Positions 33,430-47,711 of a stretch of 64,000 nt of DNA are shown here, in pieces. The number at the start of each line of letters is the position of its first letter. Position 1 is the stretch's first letter. Origin of the DNA: Trichoplax adhaerens (taxonomy: Eukaryota; Animalia; Placozoa). Below the pieces are notes generated by a model. The model was not told where the DNA came from, ran no database searches, and saw only the letters and a program-made list of their open reading frames with translations. The position numbers and the translations under genes were made by a program. Location: the NCBI RefSeq assembly GCF_000150275.1, contig NW_002060946.1:2747454-2811453 (forward strand). The letters are read 5' to 3'.

Positions 33430-34532
33430 TTACAATTTCGCCTGATTTTTTGCGTCTTTCTTTGCATTTGTGGCAGATTTATTGTTAGCCTCAGACCGTG
33501 GTGATTCATTTGACTGAGGAGCGGAATTGGATTTAGTCACATTAGGCATTATAGATTTCCTGAAATTTTGATACGCATTAAACATTTCTCGTGGCTTTTC
33601 TAAATACGGATAATGACCTGCACCATTCAGTTCTACGATAGAATCCGCGGATACATTTCGCCTGATAAATTTTTCGCATAGGAATTGAAAATATTAACAA
33701 CATGCATTGATAACGAATTATTATCAAATAAATTTGTTGTGATAAAGAGTCTTCTAAAAAATAGTGGATAAAATATGAACTACACTTTCTTGTAACTTCA
33801 CTTAATTACATATATATCGGTTCGTCTCACAACTATAAGGAATAGCTAAATTATTACATCAAGATCCATCGTTTAAATACAATCAGTTACGGAATGATTT
33901 TTCCCCAATACAATCATATCTTGCCTATTACAATTGTAATCTTAAGCTAACTTGGGGCTGCACTACACTTGTAAATGCCCCATTAAGTGTAGTTATAAAA
34001 TAGTAAGCTACATTATTAGGAGTTATTTACAATAAAGCTTATTTAAGGTCTGACAAGAATAGAAACCTTTGTCTGACGAATAGTTAATGAATTATACGGT
34101 ACTTACTTCCAAGCACCAATGATATCGTCACCAACATGCGGATCTTCCATACCAACGATAAAATATCCTATCAAATTAAATTTTAAAATATTATTTTACC
34201 ACATAACATATATTTGATAGTGTTGCAAAACATTTAACTATTAATAATAGAATGCACTAACTCTAAATATGCCAGCATTCATCATTTTCAAATTTTTACT
34301 ACATACTTGGGACTTTGGTTTGGCGGATAGCTCTTGTATGTCTGCTCGCTTGATTAATGCGATCCACTGTATAGTAAACAAATTTATTAGCTACCGCGTT
34401 TCCGTAATTAAAGCGAAAAATTGCCCATTCGTCTTTAAGTTCATTCAATCTAGGTTTGGTTGACCCATATAATTTCAGTAAAGTATCAGCGAATAGATTG
34501 AAGCCATACACATAGCGGCAAATGATAGCACC
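33430..34532 (-). CDS. MEST: MEST-like alpha/beta hydrolase, copy A (3' part only; 5' exons lost in the assembly gap)
   Basis: YGFNLFADTLLKLYGSTKPRLNELKDEWAIFRFNYGN, YFIVGMEDP, AGHYPYLEKP (catalytic His), C-terminus ...KKDAKNQAKL*; clear paralogue of copy B with the same intron positions. Confidence 0.8.
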
Positions 34533-34612
34533 TTATATCAATAACGCTTAGATTAGTTATGATCATGGAATAACTTGGATAAAAATTAGATTGGAGTGCC
34601 GGTAGAGCAATA

Positions 34613-34661
34613 NNNNNNNNNNNNNNNNNNNNNNNNNNNNNNNNNNNNNNNNNNNNNNNNN
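34613..34661. other. Assembly gap (49 N)
   Basis: Run of N. Confidence 1.
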
Positions 34662-36763
34662 NGATCCACTAATTTTTAACGTTCATATAAAAGTCTAAGG
34701 GTCAGAGATTTAAAGCCACAGGCGGCTAAGTATTGGGTCAATTCGGCGGCCACCTGCGGTTATGATTTTTTGAAAGCTGTTCCTATTTTTATACAACAGT
34801 ATCTTCAGCGTCCTATACCTTACTTCCTATCTGTTGCTTCATTATTATTTCAAATTTGTGCATCTAATCCAGTAAATTAGCTACAGCAGCAATTAATTAA
34901 TCGTTTGTGTCTGCACTATGCTATTGCTGTTATTAAGTCAAAGAATGTACGGACCAGTATATTATATTAATTGTAACAGTCGATAGGGTAATTTGCACCT
35001 ATCTCACATCTACTTTGGCGTGCACTTTGATATTTATTCATCAACGACTATCATGCTTGATTATAATAAAGCAGACATCATACCTACAAGTGTATCTACG
35101 TACTATATAAGCTATAGACTGTTGCAACTGAGTATACAGTAATATTATAGTAATATTATTGTATAAAATATAAATTAATGAACAATTGTAAGCCTACTTC
35201 ATGGGCTTTATTTTATTACTTATTGCATGATGTAGTCACTTAGTGACCTAGTTAAAATCATAACTAACGTAAACGTTCCGTTGCATTAATCGCTATTTCA
35301 ACTAAACAGCTTGTATATACTATAAATTATATTGCTAATATAATCTGTTTCGTGCAACTTACCGAATGACTAATGTTTATTAATGTAATGAGGGTTTAGA
35401 TTTGCGAATTTTAAAAATAATTTTTACGACTGCAACGTAACGTACGTACGCTATCTTAAAATAAAAAATTTCTCATTAATTAATCTATAAATCATGGACT
35501 ACCGGAACATATATCTTCTACATAATATATTTTTGTGAATTTTTTCTGGTAATTCATAATCTAAATGGAGATCCATAGAGTGCGTCATTTCCGATATTTA
35601 TGTAATTCTCATGATAGTACAGTATCGTAACAGTTGCATAAAAAAAGTACTACGAATCCGTTCTAAATCACGACTGTGCTTTACCCAATGTATAGCGTTC
35701 ATATATACTTTATAACGCTATAAATTAGTGTCATAGAAGTCCGTACATGTAGTATACAGTATAGTCCTAAAATAATAGTGTAGTACCCACTTGCGTATAG
35801 CTTCTTTCTTGATTTGTTGAATACAGCAGTAAAGTTGCCAAGTCACTGAACGACTATTTACCTATTAAATTATCTATTTATTTATATTTCATTTCTACAT
35901 TTGCATACAGCCTGGTATAGTTTATGAAATCAGTACATCGGGACTAATATATTGTATGCTATGTGAGTATCATACAAACTTTAATGTCATTGTAGTAGCT
36001 ATATACTGCACTGCAAGTAAAAATCCGCATAGAATATATCTTCGCTCAATAACCTAGTTAATATTTTGAGAATTTCTTTTACGTAACAATTATGAGAACG
36101 AATAAAGTATCGGAAAATGAAATAGCAGAATATGTACAAAGAAAAGGTGAGTGCTTTTGTTTCTAACAAATAGATTAACGAGTCATAAATCTAGCTAGGA
36201 GTTGATACGATAGTAATTACTCGTATAATTATTGAAATTAGCACTTCTAAAATAATATTGTACTGGAATTTTCTAGAGATCTTCGTCATTAAGCGAATCC
36301 TCGGGCAACTACGGTAACCAAGGACTTTTAACAATTTCGTTTACTGTAATTTTATGGTATAAATTGAAATTTAAGACTTTTAGAATTATATCTAGTAGTT
36401 GGATACTATAAAACTTCAATTATTCCCTAATAATATTACAATAATAAGAAATCTTCTATGATTTTATTATAACTTAAAAGAGTACCTATTCAGTGAATTA
36501 CAGTTTCCAATAATGTTAGAGTATCTGCTACTATTTAGCTACTCTGTTTAGATTAAGATAATAATTTAGGCAATCGATGTAATAACGTAATATTTTCTTT
36601 AGCATGAAGAAATGAACTACTTTCGTTCAACCTGTGCATATTAAGATGGTAGGGTATTTCTCTTTAATTAATTTATATATGGATCATTATCTTTAGGACA
36701 ATCATTAATTTCTTGAAATTACTTTTAATTCATTTTATTGCCCATCTGCATTTGATGTAGTTT

Positions 36764-38596
36764 TTAATTTGATAATAGAGATTTCCTGAAATTTTTGTAT
36801 ATTTCAAACGTTTCTTGAGGCTTTTCTAAGTGTGGATAGTGACCTGCTTGATCTAGCTCTGCAATAGAGTCCTCCGATACCTTTCGCCTAATGATTTTCA
36901 TGAGAGGAATTGAAAATATTAAATAATGAATGTTTATAGCTGATTAGAAACTCGCAAGCTAATATATACATATTAATCTCAGTAAAGCTAAGTTACAACT
37001 AGCAAGTGGTATGCTAGAAGAAAGCTGACTCATTACACGATGATTATTACTAGTAGCTAGGCAAAAGCAAGCAACTACATTTATACTTACTTCCAAGTAT
37101 CGATAATGGTTTTACTGATATGTGAATCAGCCATACCAAAAATAAAATACCCTAATAAATTTAAAGGTATGATTTTATAACCATGTATTACAGCGAAGAT
37201 AAAGTCACTGAGTTTATAATAATATGCACTTGATATTGATAGGTAATAACAATAAATAGGATCAAAGAGCGGATAAAGAGCTCTTAGTAATGCTAAAAAT
37301 TGATCGATCACGCTTATTGTGTAGACTTTACGCACTTGGTACATTCGTTTCTTGAAGAGTTTTTGCATGTCTATTTGCTTGATTTATACGATCCACCGTA
37401 TAGTAAACAAATTTATTAATTATTGCATTTCCATTATTCCAGCAAAAAATTGCCCATGTATCTTTTAGTTCGCTTTGACTGGGCTTACTAGTTGGTCCAT
37501 AAAACTTGAAAATAGTATTAGCAAATAAATGGAAGCCATACACATAACGAGCAATAAAAGCACCTTGAATTAAAAATAATAAATTGCAGATGACTTTTAG
37601 AAATTACGTTAATAAATGATTAATTAAAACCGTTAAGTGGTAAATACGCGTGATAGAATCGTATAATAAATACGTGAATAGCTTACCAACATAGGGCAAC
37701 AATATTATTTTTTCTATTGGCATTATGTAGGTGTCTTCAACTATTACACGACCATTTAAGACACATAAACTATTAATGTTAAGATTTTGAGCGCTACCGC
37801 TTGTCTTACTTCTTTTTCGATCTTCGTATCTGTAAATGATGGAAATTTGAAGACTTACGTAAGATTATTTAGCATAAATTTCCGTTCAAGACTTTTAAGT
37901 TATGGATTTTCGCAGATAGAAATATATATGTATTCCATCGCTTGATCATTATCATACTCGTAGATTAAAATAAGATATGTGATAGGTTAAAATGCTACTA
38001 TATGACCTTGTTAATAATTCCATAGCTACATTAGCACCCATGTCGCTTGCAAAGATATGAACGTCTTGTATACCAAGCTCATACATCATATGCTCATATA
38101 AATCGGCATGAAATGCTAGATCATAGGTAGTATTATTTGGCTTATCACTGAAACCGCAGCCAAGCATGTCTACAGAAACAACCCGTCGATTGATTGTTTT
38201 CAATTGGCTACAGATTCTTCGCCAATCATAGGAACTTTGAGTAAAACCATGAATTAATAGAATTGCATCATTATCTCGCCGACCTTCCTCATCTAAAATT
38301 GTAAATGGACAGCATTAGAAGCGTACGTTATAATTGGTACTTACAGTGCTTAGAATGGGTGTTATTTCAATTTACATAACATTACATTTATTATTGTCGA
38401 TCAAGATTGTACTATAGTGTATAACCTATAAGTTATGATTACCTCTATAGTATACTTTGCAATCGCGAAACATTTTATAAGAACCATTAGCTCTCCATTT
38501 CTCAATTTTAGAGGAGAGTCTTGGAACAGGATAAAATGCATAAATAGCAGCGAAACCAGCTCCGGCCAATGCAAGGGCTGAAGCAAAAGTCTGCAT
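36764..38596 (-). CDS. MEST: MEST-like alpha/beta hydrolase (epoxide-hydrolase fold), copy B, complete
   Basis: Hydrophobic N-terminus MQTFASALALAGAGFAAIYAFYPVPRLS...W; LLIHGFTQSSYDW; DMLGCGFSDKP; nucleophile elbow HIFASDMGANVAMELL; GPTSKPSQSELKDTW; AGHYPHLEKP; stop at 36764-36766. Confidence 0.88.
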
Positions 38597-40164
38597 GTTT
38601 CGAGACTGTTGGGCATTCAAATTGACATTCGTTATTAGCCTTCAATTGGTATTTTTTACAGGATTAACACACATTATCATTTACAATTGTAAATAATATT
38701 ACTGTAGATAATTTATCAGAAACATGAAAACGATACGTTTTTGGTTAGGTGCCCTATTAGTAGTATCTTAGTGACTCTAACAGTGTTGACATTGATGGAA
38801 ATACGTAGACAAGAGAACTATTTTAGCTGATTGTGCTAAATTATGTTATGAAAGCTAATTAATTAAGTTACTTAATATAAAACATTTAAGGACCAGATCA
38901 AGTGTACACTGCACAGCGTACAGTATTCAACTTAGTAAATATCGAAATTACATGCATTTCCTCCTCGTGAATACAATCGTGATATGATAATCTTACAGCA
39001 TGGTTAAAACTATTGTATTTGCAATTTAAAAGTCCACTTGATATTATTACTACAGTTAATGCGTTTTCTCCTATAAACCGTGGTACAGTCGCTTGTTTAT
39101 ATTTATTATTATTGGCAGCCTTGCTTACAAAGATGTTTGACCAAGTTGCAAGAATCATTTAGAAATGAATGGCTTTCTTAATCGTTCTGAAAATTTAAAC
39201 CACAACAGGTGCAAGATGCTATTGGAGGCCAATTTTGGTGTTGTAGAAGAGGTCAATAGGCAGAAGATGAACTAAAGTATTCCTTTCATCAAGAAAAGTA
39301 TAGGAGCGACACAGTCGACAATGTTGTTTTATTTTATTTACGCAAGCAATTTATCAAAGTCTAAGGGTCAGGATTTCTAACCGTAGGAGGCTAAGAGCAT
39401 CCAGCATAATCAAACATTCTACAGTCAAATGTTGACTTTACTGTGCGGCCTAGACGATGCAGATTGATGCAAGATAATTTGAATTCAGTATAGATTTACA
39501 GCTGTTAATACTTAATAGCATGTAGGTGATGTCGTCTGCTTGCATCATCAAGTAGTCTGCATGTAAACACCGTACTGGATATCAAGATGGCGAATTCATT
39601 TGAGAGGTGTTTATCAACCTACCACCAGTACTGTGATTTCTATACTGAAATCGGGGTAAGGGTGATATTTTTTCTTTCGTAGTTCCTGTAGTCACTCCAC
39701 TCATGCTCCATTGCTGTCTGGTGAAGTCTTTGAAAGATTGCAAACTACCTTACTGATGAACTGTAGTACAGCACCATATATGATGATATATCTCCCGATA
39801 TGAAGACGTCGTGTCGAGGATGAGATCGACATATTTTTATAGACTAACTTACACGGACCTTTTTGAATATTGTAACAAAAGCAGCTTTTTATCTTCCGTT
39901 TTGGTAGGTTGAGCTTTATTGGGGATTTAGTCAACTTATACAGAATAAGATATAGTCTGGCGCATTTCAATACTGTCGACAATTTCAGTTCATTACTCGC
40001 GTAATAATAATTATTATTAGGGAAAATTTATTATTATCGACTGGATGCTCCCACTGCTGTCTAGTGAAGTCCAACAAAAACGCCTTCTTCTACAGTGTAT
40101 AGTGTACAGTACAGTGTACTATACACTGTACGCTACCGTACTGTAGCGTGCTGTGTGTATGTCG

Positions 40165-40177
40165 GTTGTTTAGTAAC
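40165..40177 (+). promoter_or_regulatory. Candidate RFX X-box (GTTGTTTAGTAAC) upstream of CEP41
   Basis: Fits the imperfect palindrome GTTNYY-N-RGYAAC; lies in the MEST/CEP41 divergent interval, upstream of a ciliary gene. Confidence 0.4.
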
Positions 40178-40407
40178 AGCGGCAAAACAACCAACCACTT
40201 CAGTTTGAAAACATGCACTTGTTGGCGATAGGTAGAGTGCGCATGGAGGCATTTACGTATTGGGCTTTCTATCACTACTTTCGACAACAAGTGGAATCGT
40301 ACTACTGCAAGAAAAACGTTGGAAACGTATTGTAATCCACAGCACTATCCTACGGTCGAGAGGCTGTTCTACTCTATCGCACCGTAGGCAGTCCACGGTA
40401 ATACGCG

Positions 40408-40747
40408 CTACATAACCGAATTTAAAATTAAACCTAATAATTTTTAATAAATTTGGCAAAGTGATCTTCTATATTGATAATTTTCCCTTAAAATTATTCA
40501 ATTTGGATTGGAAGAATCAATCGTGCATTGGGTTGCAACTCTTTCCAACCTCTTCATCATCTGGAATATTGGGTATAGAACCGTAGATCCGTTCAAATTT
40601 ATTAGAATATTATACCATCTACGGGAATATACTCTACATAACCGAATTTGAAATTAAAATTATTCAATTTGGATTGGAAGAATCAATCGCGCATTGGGTT
40701 GCAACTCTTTCCAACCTCTTCCAGCATCATCCACAATATTGGGTATA
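40408..40747. repeat. Local direct duplication upstream of the CEP41 ATG
   Basis: tacataaccgaattt.aaattaaa at 40408 and 40635; aattattcaatttggattggaagaatcaatcg.gcattgggttgcaactctttccaacctctt at ~40491 and ~40658. Confidence 0.85.
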
Positions 40748-40816
40748 CAAGTGTAGATCAGTAAATCGCTGATTGCAGTGTTATCAATTGATTTCATTAC
40801 CAGAAAATTAACCAAG

Positions 40817-43800
40817 ATGTCTACAAGTCGAGCCAGCCAAGTAAGTAGAAAGAGGAATATCAATACTGTGTAGAAGGAATGACATCGATGCGACATTTCT
40901 ACTCAATGGTATACAGGATCTATGTTAGTGCAAGTCAAATACTGTACATGTACAACATGCAATTTTAATTACAATTATACTTTTAATGTATTCCATCTAT
41001 GCATGATCAACTATTATAGAATGAAAGAAGAGTTTCTGTTATACTGTAGGTTAAGCAAGTGATGTTATCAGTAATAATAATAATTTTACTGTACTATACG
41101 ACTGTAGTGACCGTCTAAAACCGATGATTGTACCAAGTAGTTATTCGCGTCGGGTATAGAGTATGGTTCATCCAGATGAAACTTCACTTGACAAGTAATC
41201 AAGATGAACAAGATTATTGATGATTTTATCGAATGATTCTTCCATTCAATTAGAATTTAAACAAGAAGATACCTAGGAATCCTAGATATGAACATGTTAA
41301 AAGAACCGTCGATACAGGTAGAAATGAATTCATCATTGTTGACGTTAACTTAACCAAACGGACTACAGTATAGTTTATGTAAAGTGGCGTAGCCCTACTT
41401 GATTGCAATTGAAACGTCAGACCATCCTTATTTTCAAGACACAAATCTTATACAACACAAAATTATCCACTCTTCAATTGAATTATCCCTTTGAAAATCT
41501 TTTTCCTATCAATGGAGTCTTGTATAGCCTAGAATTAATATACCCTACTGTATTGTATGTACTACGGTTAAAATCAAAATTCGTTTGCTGTAATAACACG
41601 TATAACGGTAGACTGTCAATACAAGATGTTGCTACATGGCAAGTAACGCCTCCTAAAATATCTAAAGCAAATATAATGTCTCAACAAATTTTATTGATTT
41701 TATTGTATAGGTGCAAGTGTCACTAATTATGCCGAAAAAATGGAAGAGTTAAATAAAAGTAAGTAATAGTAAGAAATGATGTGACTTATTTGATTTTCAA
41801 CAAGTTAATTATTGTAATAGACTATGAATGGAGTGATCACCTGAAACATTATTATGACATGATTGATGCAATGATTTCACGTGAAATCATTTACATCGTA
41901 CAGGCTATACTGTTGTGTAATATACCTCTATACAGTACGATGGATAAATAATTAATTAAATCACTCTCTGTATAATTGTAGTAGATAGAAATTACAGAAC
42001 AATTGGATAATGTAAAATAAAGGTTGATACCGTTGAAGAATTTTAACCGGAAAGTTAGAAATTAAAATAGTGAATTCCTCTCAAATGTCCTACTATTGCA
42101 TAATCATTCCTATTTACAGTTGATATTATTGTCATACTTTAACAAAATCGCCCATACCATAACTTCAGGAATATCAAAGTGTTTTCTATAATATAGATGT
42201 TGATGTGGGAAATGCCGGTAGTAATTACGCCTTATTACACGGGTATATTAATGCTCAGTTAATTGATATAAACTAGACTACAAGTACAGAAAAGATGAAA
42301 TTTTTAGAAGGATGAAATGTACCACTTTTGTACAGCTGGTAAATACTCTAATCTTTTTAAATTGCATATCTAGTTTAAAACTTGTATGACAATGATCATG
42401 CCATCATTTTAAAATCTCTGATTAGCTAAATTTCGTATCACCATTTCCATCGTCTCTAGTTACTTCAAGTAGCTGATCTTGCCCAACAAGAAGAAATTGC
42501 TGGTAGGTCCCTTCCTTCCGTACATTTTATCATTTATTATTTCTTCCATGTAGCAATGTCATACTCATAAATCGAAATTGTTTATTGGAATTAACCAATC
42601 TAAGCGGCACTTGCTATTGCATTATATTTTAGCCATGGAAGCTGATGCAGTACGAAATTCCAGATTAGATAATGAAGCCGTTGCTAATAGATCCGATCAA
42701 TCTTTAGAGGAGGACGATGCTCTCGACACCAGCCGGTCAACGTTGCAGGGGTAATAATTTACGAACATAAAGTTAGCTATACCTGACGTAATCACTGATC
42801 ATTTTTTACTGTCCTTTTTGACAGTGTCATTAAAGGATTCGGCGAAGTAGATATACAAGAAATAAAGTCAACACCGGAAAACAACACACAGAAACCAATT
42901 GTGAAATCGCCTATCACAAATCCTTACGGTGTAGACGATTCTTCCCCATTTCTTTTGCTTGACGTTCGCAATCCAGACTCTTTTAGACTTTGTCATATAG
43001 TTGGAGGTATGATGCTTATGTAGGCTTAAGCTTAGTTTACAGCTATTGATGTTATCCTATCTGCTCTTATCAAATTTAATCTATTGTATTTTTATTAGCA
43101 AAAAACTATCCAACGACCTTGCTATCGAGATCATGCAACTATTTTTCCAAAGAAATTTTAGTTTATGTATCCTAAGCATACATTCAGATTGATATTACTC
43201 TCATTAAGTTGCCCATTGAATACAGTTGTACTATCTTTTGCATATAATTTTCTTAACAAAGATGCTACTCTAGAAAAACAAACCTGGTAAAATTATAATC
43301 TTGTATGACGAAGATGAAACCGTTGCTCCTCAAACTGCTACCACATTTGTACAACGAGAAGTAGACAATGTTTTTATACTATCAGGAGGTTTGTCTTCAC
43401 TTTAAATTATCAATTTTTGTTGCACATTTTCATTATATTATAATTGTCCATTTTTTGAATATATTCAGGAATGAAAGTGCTGTATAAAAAATTTCCTGAA
43501 GGGATGATCCGAGGAACATTGCCAGCGTCATGTCAACCTTCTCCGCCAACAGAAAGAAGAGCTAAGAAAACTTCTTCTAGCAAATCCTCAGCAAAACCTG
43601 GGTCAGCAGGCATGATTAAGGCTGCCATGCAGTCAGTCGTTAAACTTAGGCCAATTATTCCAGGAGAGCAAGAAATATTGACTGCTGATGATATCTTTTC
43701 ATAACAACTAATTTCTAGCGTAATTCTTGAATTTAAGCGATATACGACATATAGTGATGTATATATATATATATACTGCATGATGCTATACCGTGACGGA

Positions 43801-44141
43801 CAATGTAGGTGTTAAATTAATGTTATTCTCCTATTGCATGAATGTTTATCACGTTCTAGTAAGTTTTGTAAATTAAACTGGTTTTTCCTTAATCATAACT
43901 ACATGCTGAAATTATTCGAGAAGTTCTTGATGTTCACTTATTCGAAGAAGCAAAGACCCAAAGTATGTCTGAGCTATAACTTGAATATTTTATCTTTTGC
44001 AAATTTCTAACGATTATTAATATGCAATACACTCTAAAAGGTCGGTTATCTAGTGTACAAACTTCAAGATCATCGAGTATTATGACAAGTCGATCAGCTG
44101 CTAGTTCCGCCTCTGGTATGCATTCTAAGCCGTGGAAGTGA
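40817..44141 (+). CDS. CEP41: Centrosomal protein of 41 kDa (TSGA14), rhodanese-like domain
   Basis: MSTSRASQ|[22 protein letters not shown]...[21 protein letters not shown]...SRSTLQGVIKG...[25 protein letters not shown]...[11 protein letters not shown]...[30 protein letters not shown]...SKPWK*; the terminal KPWK matches CEP41. Confidence 0.95.
43167..43273 (+). other. U12-type GT-AG intron in CEP41
   Basis: 5' splice site GTATCCTA; branch TTTCTTAAC at 43249-43257; splicing gives EILVY|KNKPGK. Confidence 0.8.
43691..43902 (+). other. U12-type AT-AC intron in CEP41
   Basis: 5' splice site ATATCTTT; branch TTCCTTAAT at 43885-43893; terminal AC at 43901-43902; removal gives in-frame [27 protein letters not shown] leading to the KPWK exon. 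Confidence 0.88.
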
Positions 44142-45070: not shown

Positions 45071-47193
45071 TTAATTTCCGGTATACATTGGCTTTCTTTT
45101 TTCTGAAAAGGCCTTCAATCCTTCTATACGATCTTTCGTCGGAATAACCTGCAGTATAAGAGAATATATCAATTTAGAGTAGTCACATTAAATTGATACC
45201 TCTAAAGTATCTATAGTTTGATTGATAATTTACTTGAGCATAGTATGATTCTTCCAATGCAAGGCCAGTCGCTATATCTGTCTGTATTAATTTAAATTGT
45301 ATTTAGTGATTAATGATTCGTTAATGGAAAGTTTAGGTTCAGATAAAAATGAGAAAATTACGTCAAGATTAAGTAAATTAGATTATTAACTTACTTCTAT
45401 GCCACCATTAATTGCGGCTTTAGCCATCCTCACAGCTAAGGGTCCCTATAGTATATTTATTATAGTAAGACATAATTTCCTTTAGTGTGAAGAGGTCACT
45501 GCTTCTTAACTGAATGCCTTTATAACAACCTGTGGCAAAATTTGTTCAGCCAATGATACAGCAGCATGATAAGCTGCATCGCCTTCTACAGATTGCTCGA
45601 CAGCTTCTTCTACTAAACCTATTTTTGCAGCTTCATGTCCATTAAGAATTTTAGCGGAGAAAATTAACCGCTTCGCTTGTGCAATTCCTACAATTCGTGT
45701 TAAACGTTGTGTACCACCGGCACCAGGAATAATTGCCAACTTTGTTTCAACGAGACCTAACTTAGCATTTGAGGCTATTGAATATAGCAAGTTTATAATG
45801 TAGTTAGATTGCTATAATATTGACACACTGCAGATAATATTATACAGACTTATTTGCTACAGCAGGTCTTCATCTTAATAAATGCAATGGTACAAATAAA
45901 TAATCTAATGGATCGTATTGTATAAGATCTACTCGCATATACAAGTATACCTGCTAATCTAAAATCACATGCAAGAGCAATTTCCAACCCTCCACCTAAT
46001 GCAGCTCCATCTAATGCAGCAATTGTTGGCATTGGTAAAGCAGCAATACCAGATAATAAAGCTCGAAGACCAGATACGAAAGGTCCAACTTCTTCAGGCG
46101 GCATTTGCAATCGTTCTTTTAAATCTGCACCGGCACAAAAGATATTAGGTACAGCACTTCTGAGAATGACTACTCGGACGGATTTGTCATGCTTCACAGC
46201 TTCTATTGATTCTCGAAACTAAAAGACAAAAAAGTAGACATAACAAAACTGATTTGGCAGATTACAGTAGATGTTAACTTTGTCCTTTAGCAATACACTT
46301 CAAGGAAATTCAGCATGCAGCGAGTATAAGATGAAGTGATCTGAAGGGCAGTATGGAATTGCGTAATAAATTACAATATCAAAATTTAACCGTAAAAGAG
46401 TTATTGAAATATCAGACCACTACATTCAGTCTTGTCAGTCAATGACAGCGATTTGAAAAATCTGCACATGCATTGATTACAGCTTTTAGATCGCAGAGAT
46501 AATACAAAACGAAGGAGTATTTTGGATTCTTATACGAATCGCAGTTGGTGACATGGAGCTCAAAAATTAGTGATCATAATTCGTAATGCACTTTGGCCTA
46601 ACTTTGAATGTAAAGCGTCATTGCCTGTTAATACAAGACATTACACAGCTAAAAGCTGTGTAAAGAATAAAGAATAACAAGGTAATGACAGTAAGACTCA
46701 GCTATAAATATATTCCATAATAATACATTTGCAGGTCAAAGAAGTAAAAAGGTCATGATTGTATGGCTCCATATGCAGCCATCAATGTATCTGTTTATAC
46801 CGATATCTCGTCATGTTCAGCCTATCCTTACCTGGTTAGCAACGTGTTTACTTATAGCATTCTTAGCTTTGGGTCTATTAAACGTAAAGACAGTAATACC
46901 TGTTCGAAGTGATGGTGAAATAAGATCACTTTATAATCAATCAATAAACAAATCATACAATTTATTATCTACTCCAGGAAATTATGCTTAAATTGCTAAC
47001 CTTCCTGATCTCCGCTTAATCTTTCAGCATAAAAGTCATCTTTTATTGCTTCTGAACGTAAGGAAGAGTAGCAACATTGAGCACATCTGTTGAATGAAGC
47101 TGCTTGGCCATCGGCAACTTTTGCAGGTAAAATCCTCCTACTGGAAAGCATCAACCCTGCAGAAAATCGACTAAACCGATGCAAACTTGCCAT
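45071..47193 (-). CDS. AUH: Methylglutaconyl-CoA hydratase, mitochondrial (crotonase family)
   Basis: Arg/Ser-rich transit-peptide-like N-terminus [13 protein letters not shown]; [11 protein letters not shown]; [11 protein letters not shown]; [16 protein letters not shown]; [20 protein letters not shown]; [23 protein letters not shown]. Confidence 0.95.
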
Positions 47194-47711
47194 GTTATGA
47201 TTCACCTAGCAATATTACAGTAATTACTATTTACGTTAGCAGAGTAAACTATAAAAGATCTCAAGGCTATCCAATGGCAAATAACAATATTTGTAGTTCG
47301 TAAACGGAGGCAAATGGCCTGCTGCAAGTGTTGCACAGTAGATCATCAACGACGACAGTATGACCTCTGAAAAGCCCTTGAGAATCTATACAAAGTAGTA
47401 TACTCGTCCTACTGTAGTGCATTGTCTATAGCGCTTCATCACCGTACAGTATAGTAGCTCAGGCTCTCGTCGTCATCGTCGTGCTATCGGCATGAGAGTT
47501 AAGGCATAGAAATACGGCTCGCTGCAACGCTTCGTATTGCACAGTATGAACTACAGACTGCTACTGCGCACGGTACCTTAATGGCTCTCTTGACGCTGGG
47601 AGCCCAACTCCATGTTTACTAATTAATTAATTATTTAATTAATTCATTCGTCTGCAGTTCTCGAATCGACTTCTCCATTTCATCAACCTACGGATCCTAT
47701 CCAAGGCAACC
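47194..47711. promoter_or_regulatory. Short divergent (bidirectional) promoter interval AUH/LTA4H
   Basis: Start codons are 518 bp apart, head-to-head; locally higher GC/CpG, with ACAGTA-type motifs. Confidence 0.65.

What the first reader, a model, noticed from the sequence alone, without database searches (positions are those of the whole stretch)
33430..44141. Head-to-head MEST-CEP41 pair, as at the human 7q32 imprinted locus
Seen: MEST-like genes (-) diverge from CEP41 (+), with ATGs 2.2 kb apart. Established: human CEP41 (TSGA14) and MEST are divergent neighbours at 7q32. Inference: order and orientation have been kept since early animal evolution, long before imprinting, suggesting a shared promoter or regulatory constraint between a lipid hydrolase and a ciliary gene.
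Basis: partly seen in the sequence, partly recalled or inferred. Interest (0 to 1): 0.8.

Follow-up and report, generated by a model that had tools for sequence, protein, structure and literature searches.

The report
Divergent MEST-CEP41 gene pair in Trichoplax
In the placozoan Trichoplax, two MEST-family hydrolase genes sit head-to-head with the ciliary gene CEP41, as in vertebrates, but a third, more typical MEST gene lies elsewhere and no lineage in between could be checked, so ancient linkage is plausible, not shown.

Summary
The window is Trichoplax adhaerens.

- **MEST-B** (TRIADDRAFT_55454) runs from 38596 down to 36764 on the minus strand.
- **CEP41** runs 40817-44141 on the plus strand. 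Four of its exons each hit only 'Centrosomal protein of 41 kDa' in the PDB, in order along that protein.
- The two start codons are 2,220 bp apart, with no gene between them in the Trichoplax sp. H2 annotation.
- **The N gap is not continuous.** Against H2 it hides about 1.9 kb, including exons 1-3 of MEST-A. TRIADDRAFT_55453 is therefore a truncated model.

- Papers show that Cep41 and Mest are divergent neighbours from cyclostomes to mammals.
- Mouse Mest uses an enhancer inside Cep41 and a bidirectional alternative promoter between the two genes.
- Trichoplax has a third MEST gene (TRIADDRAFT_55848). It is intronless, more conservative, and lies 2.9 Mb away, so orthology of the linked copies is not settled. 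Trees do not reject a single placozoan MEST clade.
- No cnidarian, sponge or invertebrate bilaterian genome could be reached.
- A shared promoter is untested.

I read the pair as a probable case of conserved ancient microsynteny, a known kind of feature. Interest is moderate. This stretch was noted once before in the scan, as the same finding.

The parts
33430..34532 (-). MEST-A (TRIADDRAFT_55453), 3' half only. Exon 4 is 34532-34308, exon 5 about 34165-34106, and exon 6 is 33660-33433 plus the stop at 33430-33432. The protein has a long Ser/Asn/Lys-rich tail ending in AKL.
   Evidence: Residues 195-366 of the H2 protein P0015 (RDD36648.1, 'Mesoderm-specific transcript protein') map here at 97-100% identity. 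tblastx against MEST-B gives 56-68% identity.
34613..34662 (.). Assembly gap of 50 N. It stands for about 1.9 kb that holds MEST-A exons 1-3 and the start of its upstream region.
   Evidence: blastn of H2 locus L001 against the window: L001 9483-11393 has no counterpart. In the window's own genome that piece matches only paralogue B, at 69-71%.
35502..35588 (-). Spurious first exon of the TRIADDRAFT_55453 model. It is not part of the real gene.
   Evidence: Residues 1-29 of P0003 map here. The H2 full-length MEST-A has no such exon, and its real 5' exons fall inside the gap.
36764..38596 (-). MEST-B (TRIADDRAFT_55454). Exons: 38596-38444, 38293-38006, 37831-37685, 37564 to about 37337, about 37149-37090, and 36886-36767 plus the stop at 36764-36766.
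   Evidence: Exact mapping of P0005. Exon 2 hits Pfam Abhydrolase_1 at 7e-10 and Asp-nucleophile hydrolases in the PDB. The H2 model is 331 aa. The T. adhaerens model skips 37489 to about 37337 of exon 4; paralogue A keeps the equivalent stretch.
38597..40816 (.). Intergenic region of 2,220 bp between the two start codons. It is the candidate site of both promoters.
   Evidence: No gene is called here in H2. There is no tRNA or Rfam family. H1 and H2 are 99.2% identical across it. Promoter function is inferred only.
40479..40762 (.). Two-copy direct duplication with a period of about 166 bp. It ends 55 bp upstream of the CEP41 ATG.
   Evidence: the repeat finder families D1 and D3, 82-94% identity. 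Also present in H2. Function unknown.
40817..44141 (+). CEP41, about 11 exons. Inferred exons: 40817-40840, 41254-41317, 42277-42338, 42460-42502, 42633 to about 42751, one within 42799-43020, one within 43080-43166, 43274 to about 43400, one from 43469 to a donor I did not fix before 43701, about 43903-43962, and 44041-44141.
   Evidence: Four exons hit only PDB CEP41, in order along it. There is a weak Pfam Rhodanese match. Splice junctions were chosen from frame-consistent GT-AG or AT-AC pairs and are inferred. The gene is single-copy in the genome. The last exon had no PDB hit.

Best explanation
This is a real pair of divergently transcribed genes in Trichoplax. A tandem pair of MEST-family alpha/beta hydrolases (B next to A) lies 5'-to-5' with the single-copy ciliary gene CEP41, 2.2 kb apart.

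The most likely history is retention of an ancestral animal MEST-CEP41 linkage. That would make it a conserved ancient microsyntenic pair of the 5'-5' type. On this reading the intron-bearing copy at this locus is the parental MEST. It was duplicated in tandem into A and B. The intronless TRIADDRAFT_55848, 2.9 Mb away, is a dispersed copy, probably a retrocopy, that kept the conservative sequence.

Shown here: the gene identities, their order and orientation, the distance between them, and what the gap hides. Inferred: common ancestry of the arrangement with vertebrates. More weakly inferred: that cis-regulatory sharing between the two genes keeps them together.
For: - CEP41 identity rests; it is single-copy.
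- MEST family: the Asp-His-Asp catalytic triad is invariant in the family alignment (D135, D278, H306), with the alpha/beta-hydrolase fold.
- The H2 annotation names the copies 'Mesoderm-specific transcript protein'.
- The nearest named cluster in the protein atlas is chordate MEST, TM-score 0.83 over residues 1-327.
- Only two other weak alpha/beta-hydrolase matches exist in the genome.
- The independent H2 assembly has the same arrangement.
- Constrained trees that hold A, B and C together, or A, B, C and a eukaryote-like transcript, have higher likelihood than the free quick tree and are not rejected (p-AU 0.66 and 0.77).
- Copy C is intronless while A and B each have five introns.
- Vertebrates: Cep41 and Mest are adjacent and divergent from cyclostomes to mammals (PMC7406891, PMC6267961, bioRxiv 10.1101/2025.07.14.664778). 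A Mest/Klf14 enhancer lies inside Cep41 (bioRxiv 10.64898/2026.05.09.724006).
- Most conserved ancient pairs are 5'-5' (PMC3514665).
- My own estimate: if gene order were scrambled within a linkage group of about 450 genes, CEP41 would land next to one of two MEST loci with probability about 1%.
Against: - No intermediate lineage was examined.
- Genome-wide, around ten or more human-Trichoplax neighbour pairs are expected by chance under that same null, so a pair picked after the fact is weak evidence.
- Copy C, not A or B, is the closest to other eukaryotic MEST-like sequences: 40% against 32% identity to P0111. The free tree joins C with P0111 and excludes A and B (SH-aLRT 90).
- Long-branch attraction could explain why the constrained A+B+C tree scores well.
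- In one unnamed AT-rich eukaryote, a MEST-like gene is flanked by a SPRING1-domain gene and not by CEP41.
- Two short metagenome contigs with invertebrate-like CEP41 show no MEST in the 1.2 kb upstream of CEP41 exon 2, though they are too short to decide.
- 2.2 kb between start codons is wider than the classic bidirectional promoter (<1 kb).
Confidence: 0.6

Rival explanations
1. Chance or secondary adjacency. TRIADDRAFT_55848 (copy C) is the true MEST orthologue. A and B are an old, fast-evolving side branch of the family that happens to lie next to CEP41. The likeness to 7q32 is then a coincidence within a conserved linkage group.
For: - C is the more conservative copy and pairs with the eukaryote-like transcript P0111 in the free tree.
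- The atlas scores for C are slightly higher, and its top three hits are all MEST clusters.
- A and B sit on a branch of about 2 substitutions per site.
- C lies on the same scaffold as CEP41, as conserved macrosynteny with scrambled order would predict.
- Many chance neighbour pairs are expected genome-wide (my estimate).
Against: - For this particular pair, chance adjacency has a probability of about 1% or less, and lower still with matching 5'-5' orientation.
- C has no introns in an intron-rich genome, which is the mark of a derived copy and not of a parent gene.
- C's neighbours (DnaJ, Ribosomal_L1, a GPCR) recall nothing from the vertebrate locus.
- AU tests do not reject a clade of A, B and C.
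Confidence: 0.27
2. The linkage is ancestral but neutral. The slowly rearranging placozoan and vertebrate genomes simply have not broken the pair, and no shared promoter or regulatory constraint is involved.
For: - The 2.2 kb spacing in Trichoplax leaves room for two separate promoters.
- The interval ranges from 13 kb in chicken to 96 kb in mammals (PMC6267961).
- The mammalian bidirectional U3 promoter derives from an L1 element, so it is recent (bioRxiv 10.1101/2025.07.14.664778).
- An ER-membrane hydrolase and a ciliary protein have no obvious shared function (established knowledge of the two families).
Against: - Conserved 5'-5' pairs as a class show excess co-expression and short intergenic regions (PMC3514665).
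- A Mest-acting enhancer lies inside mouse Cep41 (bioRxiv 10.64898/2026.05.09.724006).
- Neither point was tested in Trichoplax.
Confidence: 0.35
3. Assembly or annotation artefact: the adjacency comes from a misjoin near the N gap.
For: There is a gap inside the finding, and two faulty gene models flank it.
Against: - The gap lies between MEST-A and MEST-B, not between MEST-B and CEP41.
- The gap-free H2 contig is collinear with the window across the whole region at 97-99% identity.
Confidence: 0.01

Closest known systems
Vertebrate CEP41 (TSGA14)-MEST interval (human 7q32, mouse chromosome 6)
   Same: The same two gene families are immediate neighbours and are transcribed divergently. CEP41 is single-copy (PMC6267961; bioRxiv 10.1101/2025.07.14.664778).
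   Different: - The interval is 13-96 kb in vertebrates against 2.2 kb between start codons here.
- Vertebrate MEST is single and imprinted in mammals. Trichoplax has a tandem pair at the locus plus a third dispersed copy.
- The other 7q32 neighbours are not present. Here the flanks are ATG101 and, by my reading of an ORF, an enoyl-CoA hydratase-like gene.
Conserved ancestral microsyntenic pairs (CAMPs) of Irimia et al. 2012, such as HSPE1-HSPD1
   Same: A pair of unrelated genes in 5'-5' orientation with a short intergenic region, shared between distant animals (PMC3514665).
   Different: CAMPs were defined by linkage in four or more major taxa. Here only vertebrates and placozoans are documented. 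The main text does not name MEST, CEP41 or TSGA14, and the supplement was not available.
Genomic regulatory block with a bystander gene
   Same: In mouse, an enhancer acting on Mest and Klf14 lies within Cep41 (bioRxiv 10.64898/2026.05.09.724006). This is the bystander arrangement proposed to lock neighbours together (PMC3514665).
   Different: MEST is not a developmental transcription factor. Trichoplax CEP41 introns are mostly short, about 0.1 kb up to one of about 1 kb. No conserved non-coding element was tested.
Bacterial MEST-like alpha/beta hydrolases (Porticoccaceae, Xanthomonadales, Leptospira and others)
   Same: They are 31-36% identical over the full length to Trichoplax MEST-A and have the same cap domain and catalytic triad.
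   Different: As a rule they lack the N-terminal membrane anchor. They have no link to CEP41, which was seen only in eukaryotic contigs.

Membership tests
CEP41 (centrosomal protein of 41 kDa) | Conserved N-terminal motif upstream of the rhodanese domain | tested here: met
   Window 41254-41370 aligns to residues 13-35 of PDB CEP41 (E 8e-4), the only PDB hit.
CEP41 (centrosomal protein of 41 kDa) | Central rhodanese-like domain whose best match is CEP41 and not other rhodanese proteins | tested here: met
   Exons 42799-43020, 43274-43402 and 43459-43701 each hit only 11yj_Y0, in order, at residues 140-295. Pfam Rhodanese is weak (E 0.066).
CEP41 (centrosomal protein of 41 kDa) | Ser-rich C-terminal tail ending in Lys-Pro-Trp-Lys | tested here: inconclusive
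   The last open frame (43980-44138) ends in that motif, as I recall the human protein does. The PDB search of this exon found nothing, even at E 10.
CEP41 (centrosomal protein of 41 kDa) | Ciliary or centrosomal localisation and a role in tubulin glutamylation | not testable with these tools
   Needs experiments.
MEST (mesoderm-specific transcript, alpha/beta hydrolase) | Alpha/beta-hydrolase fold with an Asp nucleophile, an acid Asp and a His | tested here: met
   Pfam Abhydrolase_1 and Abhydrolase_6. The best PDB matches are Asp-nucleophile epoxide hydrolases and dehalogenases. D135, D278 and H306 are invariant in alignment A1.
MEST (mesoderm-specific transcript, alpha/beta hydrolase) | Family-specific cap domain | tested here: met
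   The MEST-B exon 4 peptide found only 13 proteins among 1.84 billion. Those aligned belong to this hydrolase group.
MEST (mesoderm-specific transcript, alpha/beta hydrolase) | Nearest named family is animal MEST | tested here: met
   The H2 annotation name. The atlas's best structural match is chordate 'Mesoderm specific transcript', TM 0.83 for A and 0.89 for C. These are leads, not alignments.
MEST (mesoderm-specific transcript, alpha/beta hydrolase) | One-to-one or co-orthology of the CEP41-linked copies with vertebrate MEST | tested here: inconclusive
   No named animal MEST sequence could be fetched. The free tree places A and B on a long branch apart from C and P0111. Constrained clades are not rejected and score better.
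Conserved ancestral microsyntenic pair (Irimia et al. 2012) | [quoted passage not shown] | not tested
   Only placozoans and vertebrates (papers) are covered. The metagenome contigs were too short. No annotated invertebrate genome was within reach.
Bidirectional-promoter gene pair | Transcription start sites less than about 1 kb apart, with co-expression | tested here: inconclusive
   The start codons are 2,220 bp apart. Start sites and expression are unknown.

The most novel reading that the evidence does not exclude
MEST and CEP41 have been locked 5'-to-5' since before placozoans and bilaterians split, because they share a regulatory region. The mammalian MEST imprinting control region, the oocyte bidirectional promoter and the Cep41-embedded Mest enhancer would then all have been built on a regulatory block older than 600 million years.
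Probability: 0.2. Interest if true: 0.55.

Novelty: new member of a known kind. Interest (0 to 1): 0.35.

Why it matters
If the linkage proves ancestral and constrained, it would give the imprinted MEST domain a deep pre-imprinting history. It would also add a non-developmental, enzyme-plus-ciliary-gene example to the ancient 5'-5' pairs.

As it stands, the practical gains are corrections to the record:
- Two T. adhaerens MEST models and one H2 CEP41 model are faulty.
- The assembly gap hides half a gene.
- Trichoplax has three MEST-family genes, not one.

Tried and rejected
**Searches that gave little**
- The word-based protein search with a CEP41 exon returned only one unnamed 86-aa fragment.
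- With full-length H2 MEST-A it returned only paralogue B.
- With a family alignment it returned 426 hits, of which the 120 listed were nearly all bacterial or unnamed.
- The exhaustive representative search with MEST-B exon 4 gave 13 hits.
- P0013 and P0004 turned out to be bacterial. P0010's contig was uninformative.

**Metagenome scans**
- The scan with a motif from the CEP41 rhodanese end found nothing.
- The scan with the N-terminal motif found four contigs. They carry CEP41 exons but too little upstream DNA: 1.2 kb in L009 and L010, under 0.5 kb in L011 and L012.
- L011 and L012 have long introns and 45% GC. They may be mammalian, possibly human. After the one comparison I left them alone.

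**Papers**
- No paper in the library names the pair outside vertebrates.
- The supplements of three microsynteny papers either do not mention the genes or are not held.

**Other**
I replaced it with mapping from stored proteins.
- The careful tree search did not finish in time, so the quick tree and AU tests were used.
- Spliced models of CEP41 and MEST-B were not joined for any search. Exons were searched one at a time by reference.
- I rejected misassembly as the cause of the adjacency.
- I rejected the idea that MEST-A is a truncated pseudogene, because H2 has it whole.
Full report
**What is in the window.** The sequence is AT-rich and full of introns. Exact look-ups tie it to Trichoplax adhaerens. 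The 280-aa protein TRIADDRAFT_55454 and the 173-aa protein TRIADDRAFT_55453 map onto the minus strand of the finding. The window is G000:C1411:2747454-2811453.

**The gap, tested first.** A tblastx comparison of the two minus-strand hydrolase copies showed that the downstream copy, MEST-A, shares only the last three exons with the upstream copy, MEST-B. The first three exons of B have no second match anywhere in the window.
- The cluster of TRIADDRAFT_55453 also holds a full-length 366-aa protein of Trichoplax sp. H2, RDD36648.1, named 'Mesoderm-specific transcript protein'.
- Its gap-free contig (L001) aligns to the window in two blocks: L001 1-9482 with window 44152-34663 at 99.2%, and L001 11394-17887 with window 34612-28110 at 96.9%.
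- The 50 N at 34613-34662 therefore replace about 1,911 bp, which in H2 carry MEST-A exons 1-3.
- That piece is not elsewhere in the assembly. It matches only paralogue B, at 69-71%.
- So the two sides of the gap are neither continuous nor in frame. TRIADDRAFT_55453 is a truncated model with a spurious first exon at 35588-35502.

**The genes.** MEST-B has six exons from ATG 38596 to stop 36764. The deposited model skips the 3' half of exon 4, which paralogue A and the family keep.
- Exon 2 is an alpha/beta-hydrolase core. It hits Abhydrolase_1 at 7e-10, and its closest solved relatives are Asp-nucleophile epoxide hydrolases and haloalkane dehalogenases.
- The nucleophile Asp, the acid Asp and the His are invariant in the family alignment.

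On the plus strand, four exons each hit one PDB sequence only, 'Centrosomal protein of 41 kDa' (11yj_Y0, 373 aa). They hit it in order, at residues 13-35, 140-192, 215-255 and 252-295.
- The gene is single-copy.
- I infer about 11 exons from ATG 40817 to stop 44141, from frame-consistent splice pairs.
- The last exon ends in Lys-Pro-Trp-Lys, which I recall from the human protein, but it found nothing in the PDB.
- The H2 model (319 aa) stops near 43704 and lacks the last two exons.
Each exon was searched by reference.

**Arrangement.** The order is ATG101 (convergent), MEST-A, MEST-B, then CEP41 on the opposite strand. There are 2,220 bp between the two start codons, and no gene, tRNA or Rfam match lies between them.

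**Are the hydrolases MEST?** Family membership is well supported.
- The H2 annotation names them MEST.
- The protein atlas's nearest structural cluster is chordate MEST.

Orthology is less clear.
- A search of the window's own genome found a third member, 2.9 Mb away on the same scaffold. It is a single 329-codon open frame, TRIADDRAFT_55848, named 'Mesoderm-specific transcript-like protein' in H2.
- This copy C is more conservative. It is 40% identical to the eukaryote-like transcript P0111, against 32% for A. Its top three atlas hits are all MEST clusters.
- In a quick maximum-likelihood tree, A and B sit on a branch of about 2 substitutions per site, while C joins P0111.
- Trees constrained to hold A, B and C together, or A, B, C and P0111, have higher likelihood than the free tree and are not rejected (p-AU 0.66 and 0.77). 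Long-branch attraction could contribute to that result.
- C has no introns while A and B have five each, so I favour C as a dispersed, probably retroposed, copy of the gene at the CEP41 locus. This is an inference.
- C's neighbours (DnaJ, Ribosomal_L1, a GPCR) give no positional clue.
- A contig from a more distant placozoan-like sample carries an A-like gene with the long tail, so the A/B split is old.

**The comparison with vertebrates.** Papers establish four points.
- The Cep41-Mest interval is conserved in mammals, marsupials, platypus and chicken, at 96, 59 and 13 kb in mammals, marsupials and chicken (PMC6267961).
- CEP41 and MEST are close neighbours in lampreys and hagfish (PMC7406891).
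- A promoter between them fires in both directions towards the two genes in mouse and human oocytes, although it derives from an L1 element (bioRxiv 10.1101/2025.07.14.664778).
- An enhancer acting on Mest and Klf14 lies inside mouse Cep41 (bioRxiv 10.64898/2026.05.09.724006).

So the 'established' part of the finding holds.

**What could not be shown.** I could not reach any cnidarian, sponge, ctenophore or invertebrate bilaterian genome.
- The protein searches returned bacterial or unnamed relatives.
- Two metagenome scans gave four CEP41-bearing contigs with too little upstream DNA. Two of them (L011, L012) may be mammalian, possibly human, and I left them alone.
- One unnamed eukaryote with 27% GC has a MEST-like gene flanked by a SPRING1-domain gene and not by CEP41.
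- No paper in the library names the pair outside vertebrates. The list of 595 conserved ancestral pairs of Irimia et al. was not available to check.

**How strong is a two-lineage match?** This is my own estimate. With two MEST loci, and gene order scrambled within a linkage group of about 450 genes, CEP41 would be an immediate neighbour of one of them with probability about 1%. The probability is lower with matching orientation. Across some thousands of shared genes, the same null predicts around ten or more chance pairs genome-wide. This pair was noticed after the fact. So the match favours retention but does not prove constraint.

**Verdict.** This is a real divergent MEST-family/CEP41 pair. 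It is probably a retained ancient linkage of a known kind, the 5'-5' conserved microsyntenic pair (PMC3514665). I put that at about 0.6. A chance or secondary adjacency involving a divergent paralogue is about 0.27. A shared promoter or regulatory constraint in Trichoplax is untested.

Noticed in passing
G000:C1411:5693184-5694170 (+), which is L013:5185-6171: A third Trichoplax MEST-family gene, TRIADDRAFT_55848. It is an intronless 329-codon frame, more conservative than the two linked copies, and lies 2.9 Mb from them on the same scaffold. It may be an old retrocopy. No poly-A trace is visible downstream.
   Followed up: partly
window 37337-37489 (-): The deposited TRIADDRAFT_55454 model skips the 3' half of exon 4, the cap domain. 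Paralogue A and all relatives keep that stretch.
   Followed up: yes
window 43702-44141 (+): The H2 CEP41 model (319 aa) stops at the in-frame stop just after exon 9. Two further exons, about 43903-43962 and 44041-44141, would give the expected Ser-rich tail.
   Followed up: partly
window 43160-43280 and 43880-43905 (+): Minor-spliceosome-like signals in CEP41. There is a GTATCCT donor at 43167. A TTCCTTAAT box lies just before an AC acceptor at 43902, which would fit an AT-AC intron. This is the subject of another note of the scan.
   Followed up: partly
window 40479-40762: A two-copy direct duplication with a period of about 166 bp, ending 55 bp upstream of the CEP41 start codon. It is also present in Trichoplax sp. 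H2.
   Followed up: partly
window 33430-33560 (-): MEST-A has a 40-residue Ser/Asn/Lys-rich tail ending in Ala-Lys-Leu. The H2 full-length protein also has an N-terminal hydrophobic anchor. The two targeting signals would point to different compartments.
   Followed up: no
window 45506-47205 (-): ORFs of an enoyl-CoA hydratase-like gene (crotonase-type motifs, read by eye) lie downstream of CEP41, convergent with it. In H2, ATG101 lies beyond MEST-A. Neither is a 7q32 neighbour as far as I know.
   Followed up: no
L016:446-3509 and L017: An unnamed eukaryote with 27% GC has a two-exon MEST-like gene. A SPRING1-domain gene lies 0.6 kb upstream on the same strand. No CEP41 is present in the 3.5 kb contig.
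   Followed up: partly
L006 (Logan SRR30664517) and L008 (SRR30664516): Contigs from a more distant placozoan-like organism. L006 carries an A-type MEST with the long tail, 74% identical in exon 2. L008 carries CEP41 exons at 67-96% identity. The contigs are too short to link the two genes.
   Followed up: partly
L011, L012 (metagenome contigs): CEP41 exons spread over about 10 kb at 45% GC. These may be mammalian, possibly human, DNA within metagenomes. I did not study them beyond one exon comparison.
   Followed up: no
P0014 (2967 aa) and P0008 (2149 aa): Very long predicted proteins from metagenomes that match the MEST cap exon. P0014 matches in seven separate stretches. It may be a fused model over a tandem array or a repeat protein.
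   Followed up: no
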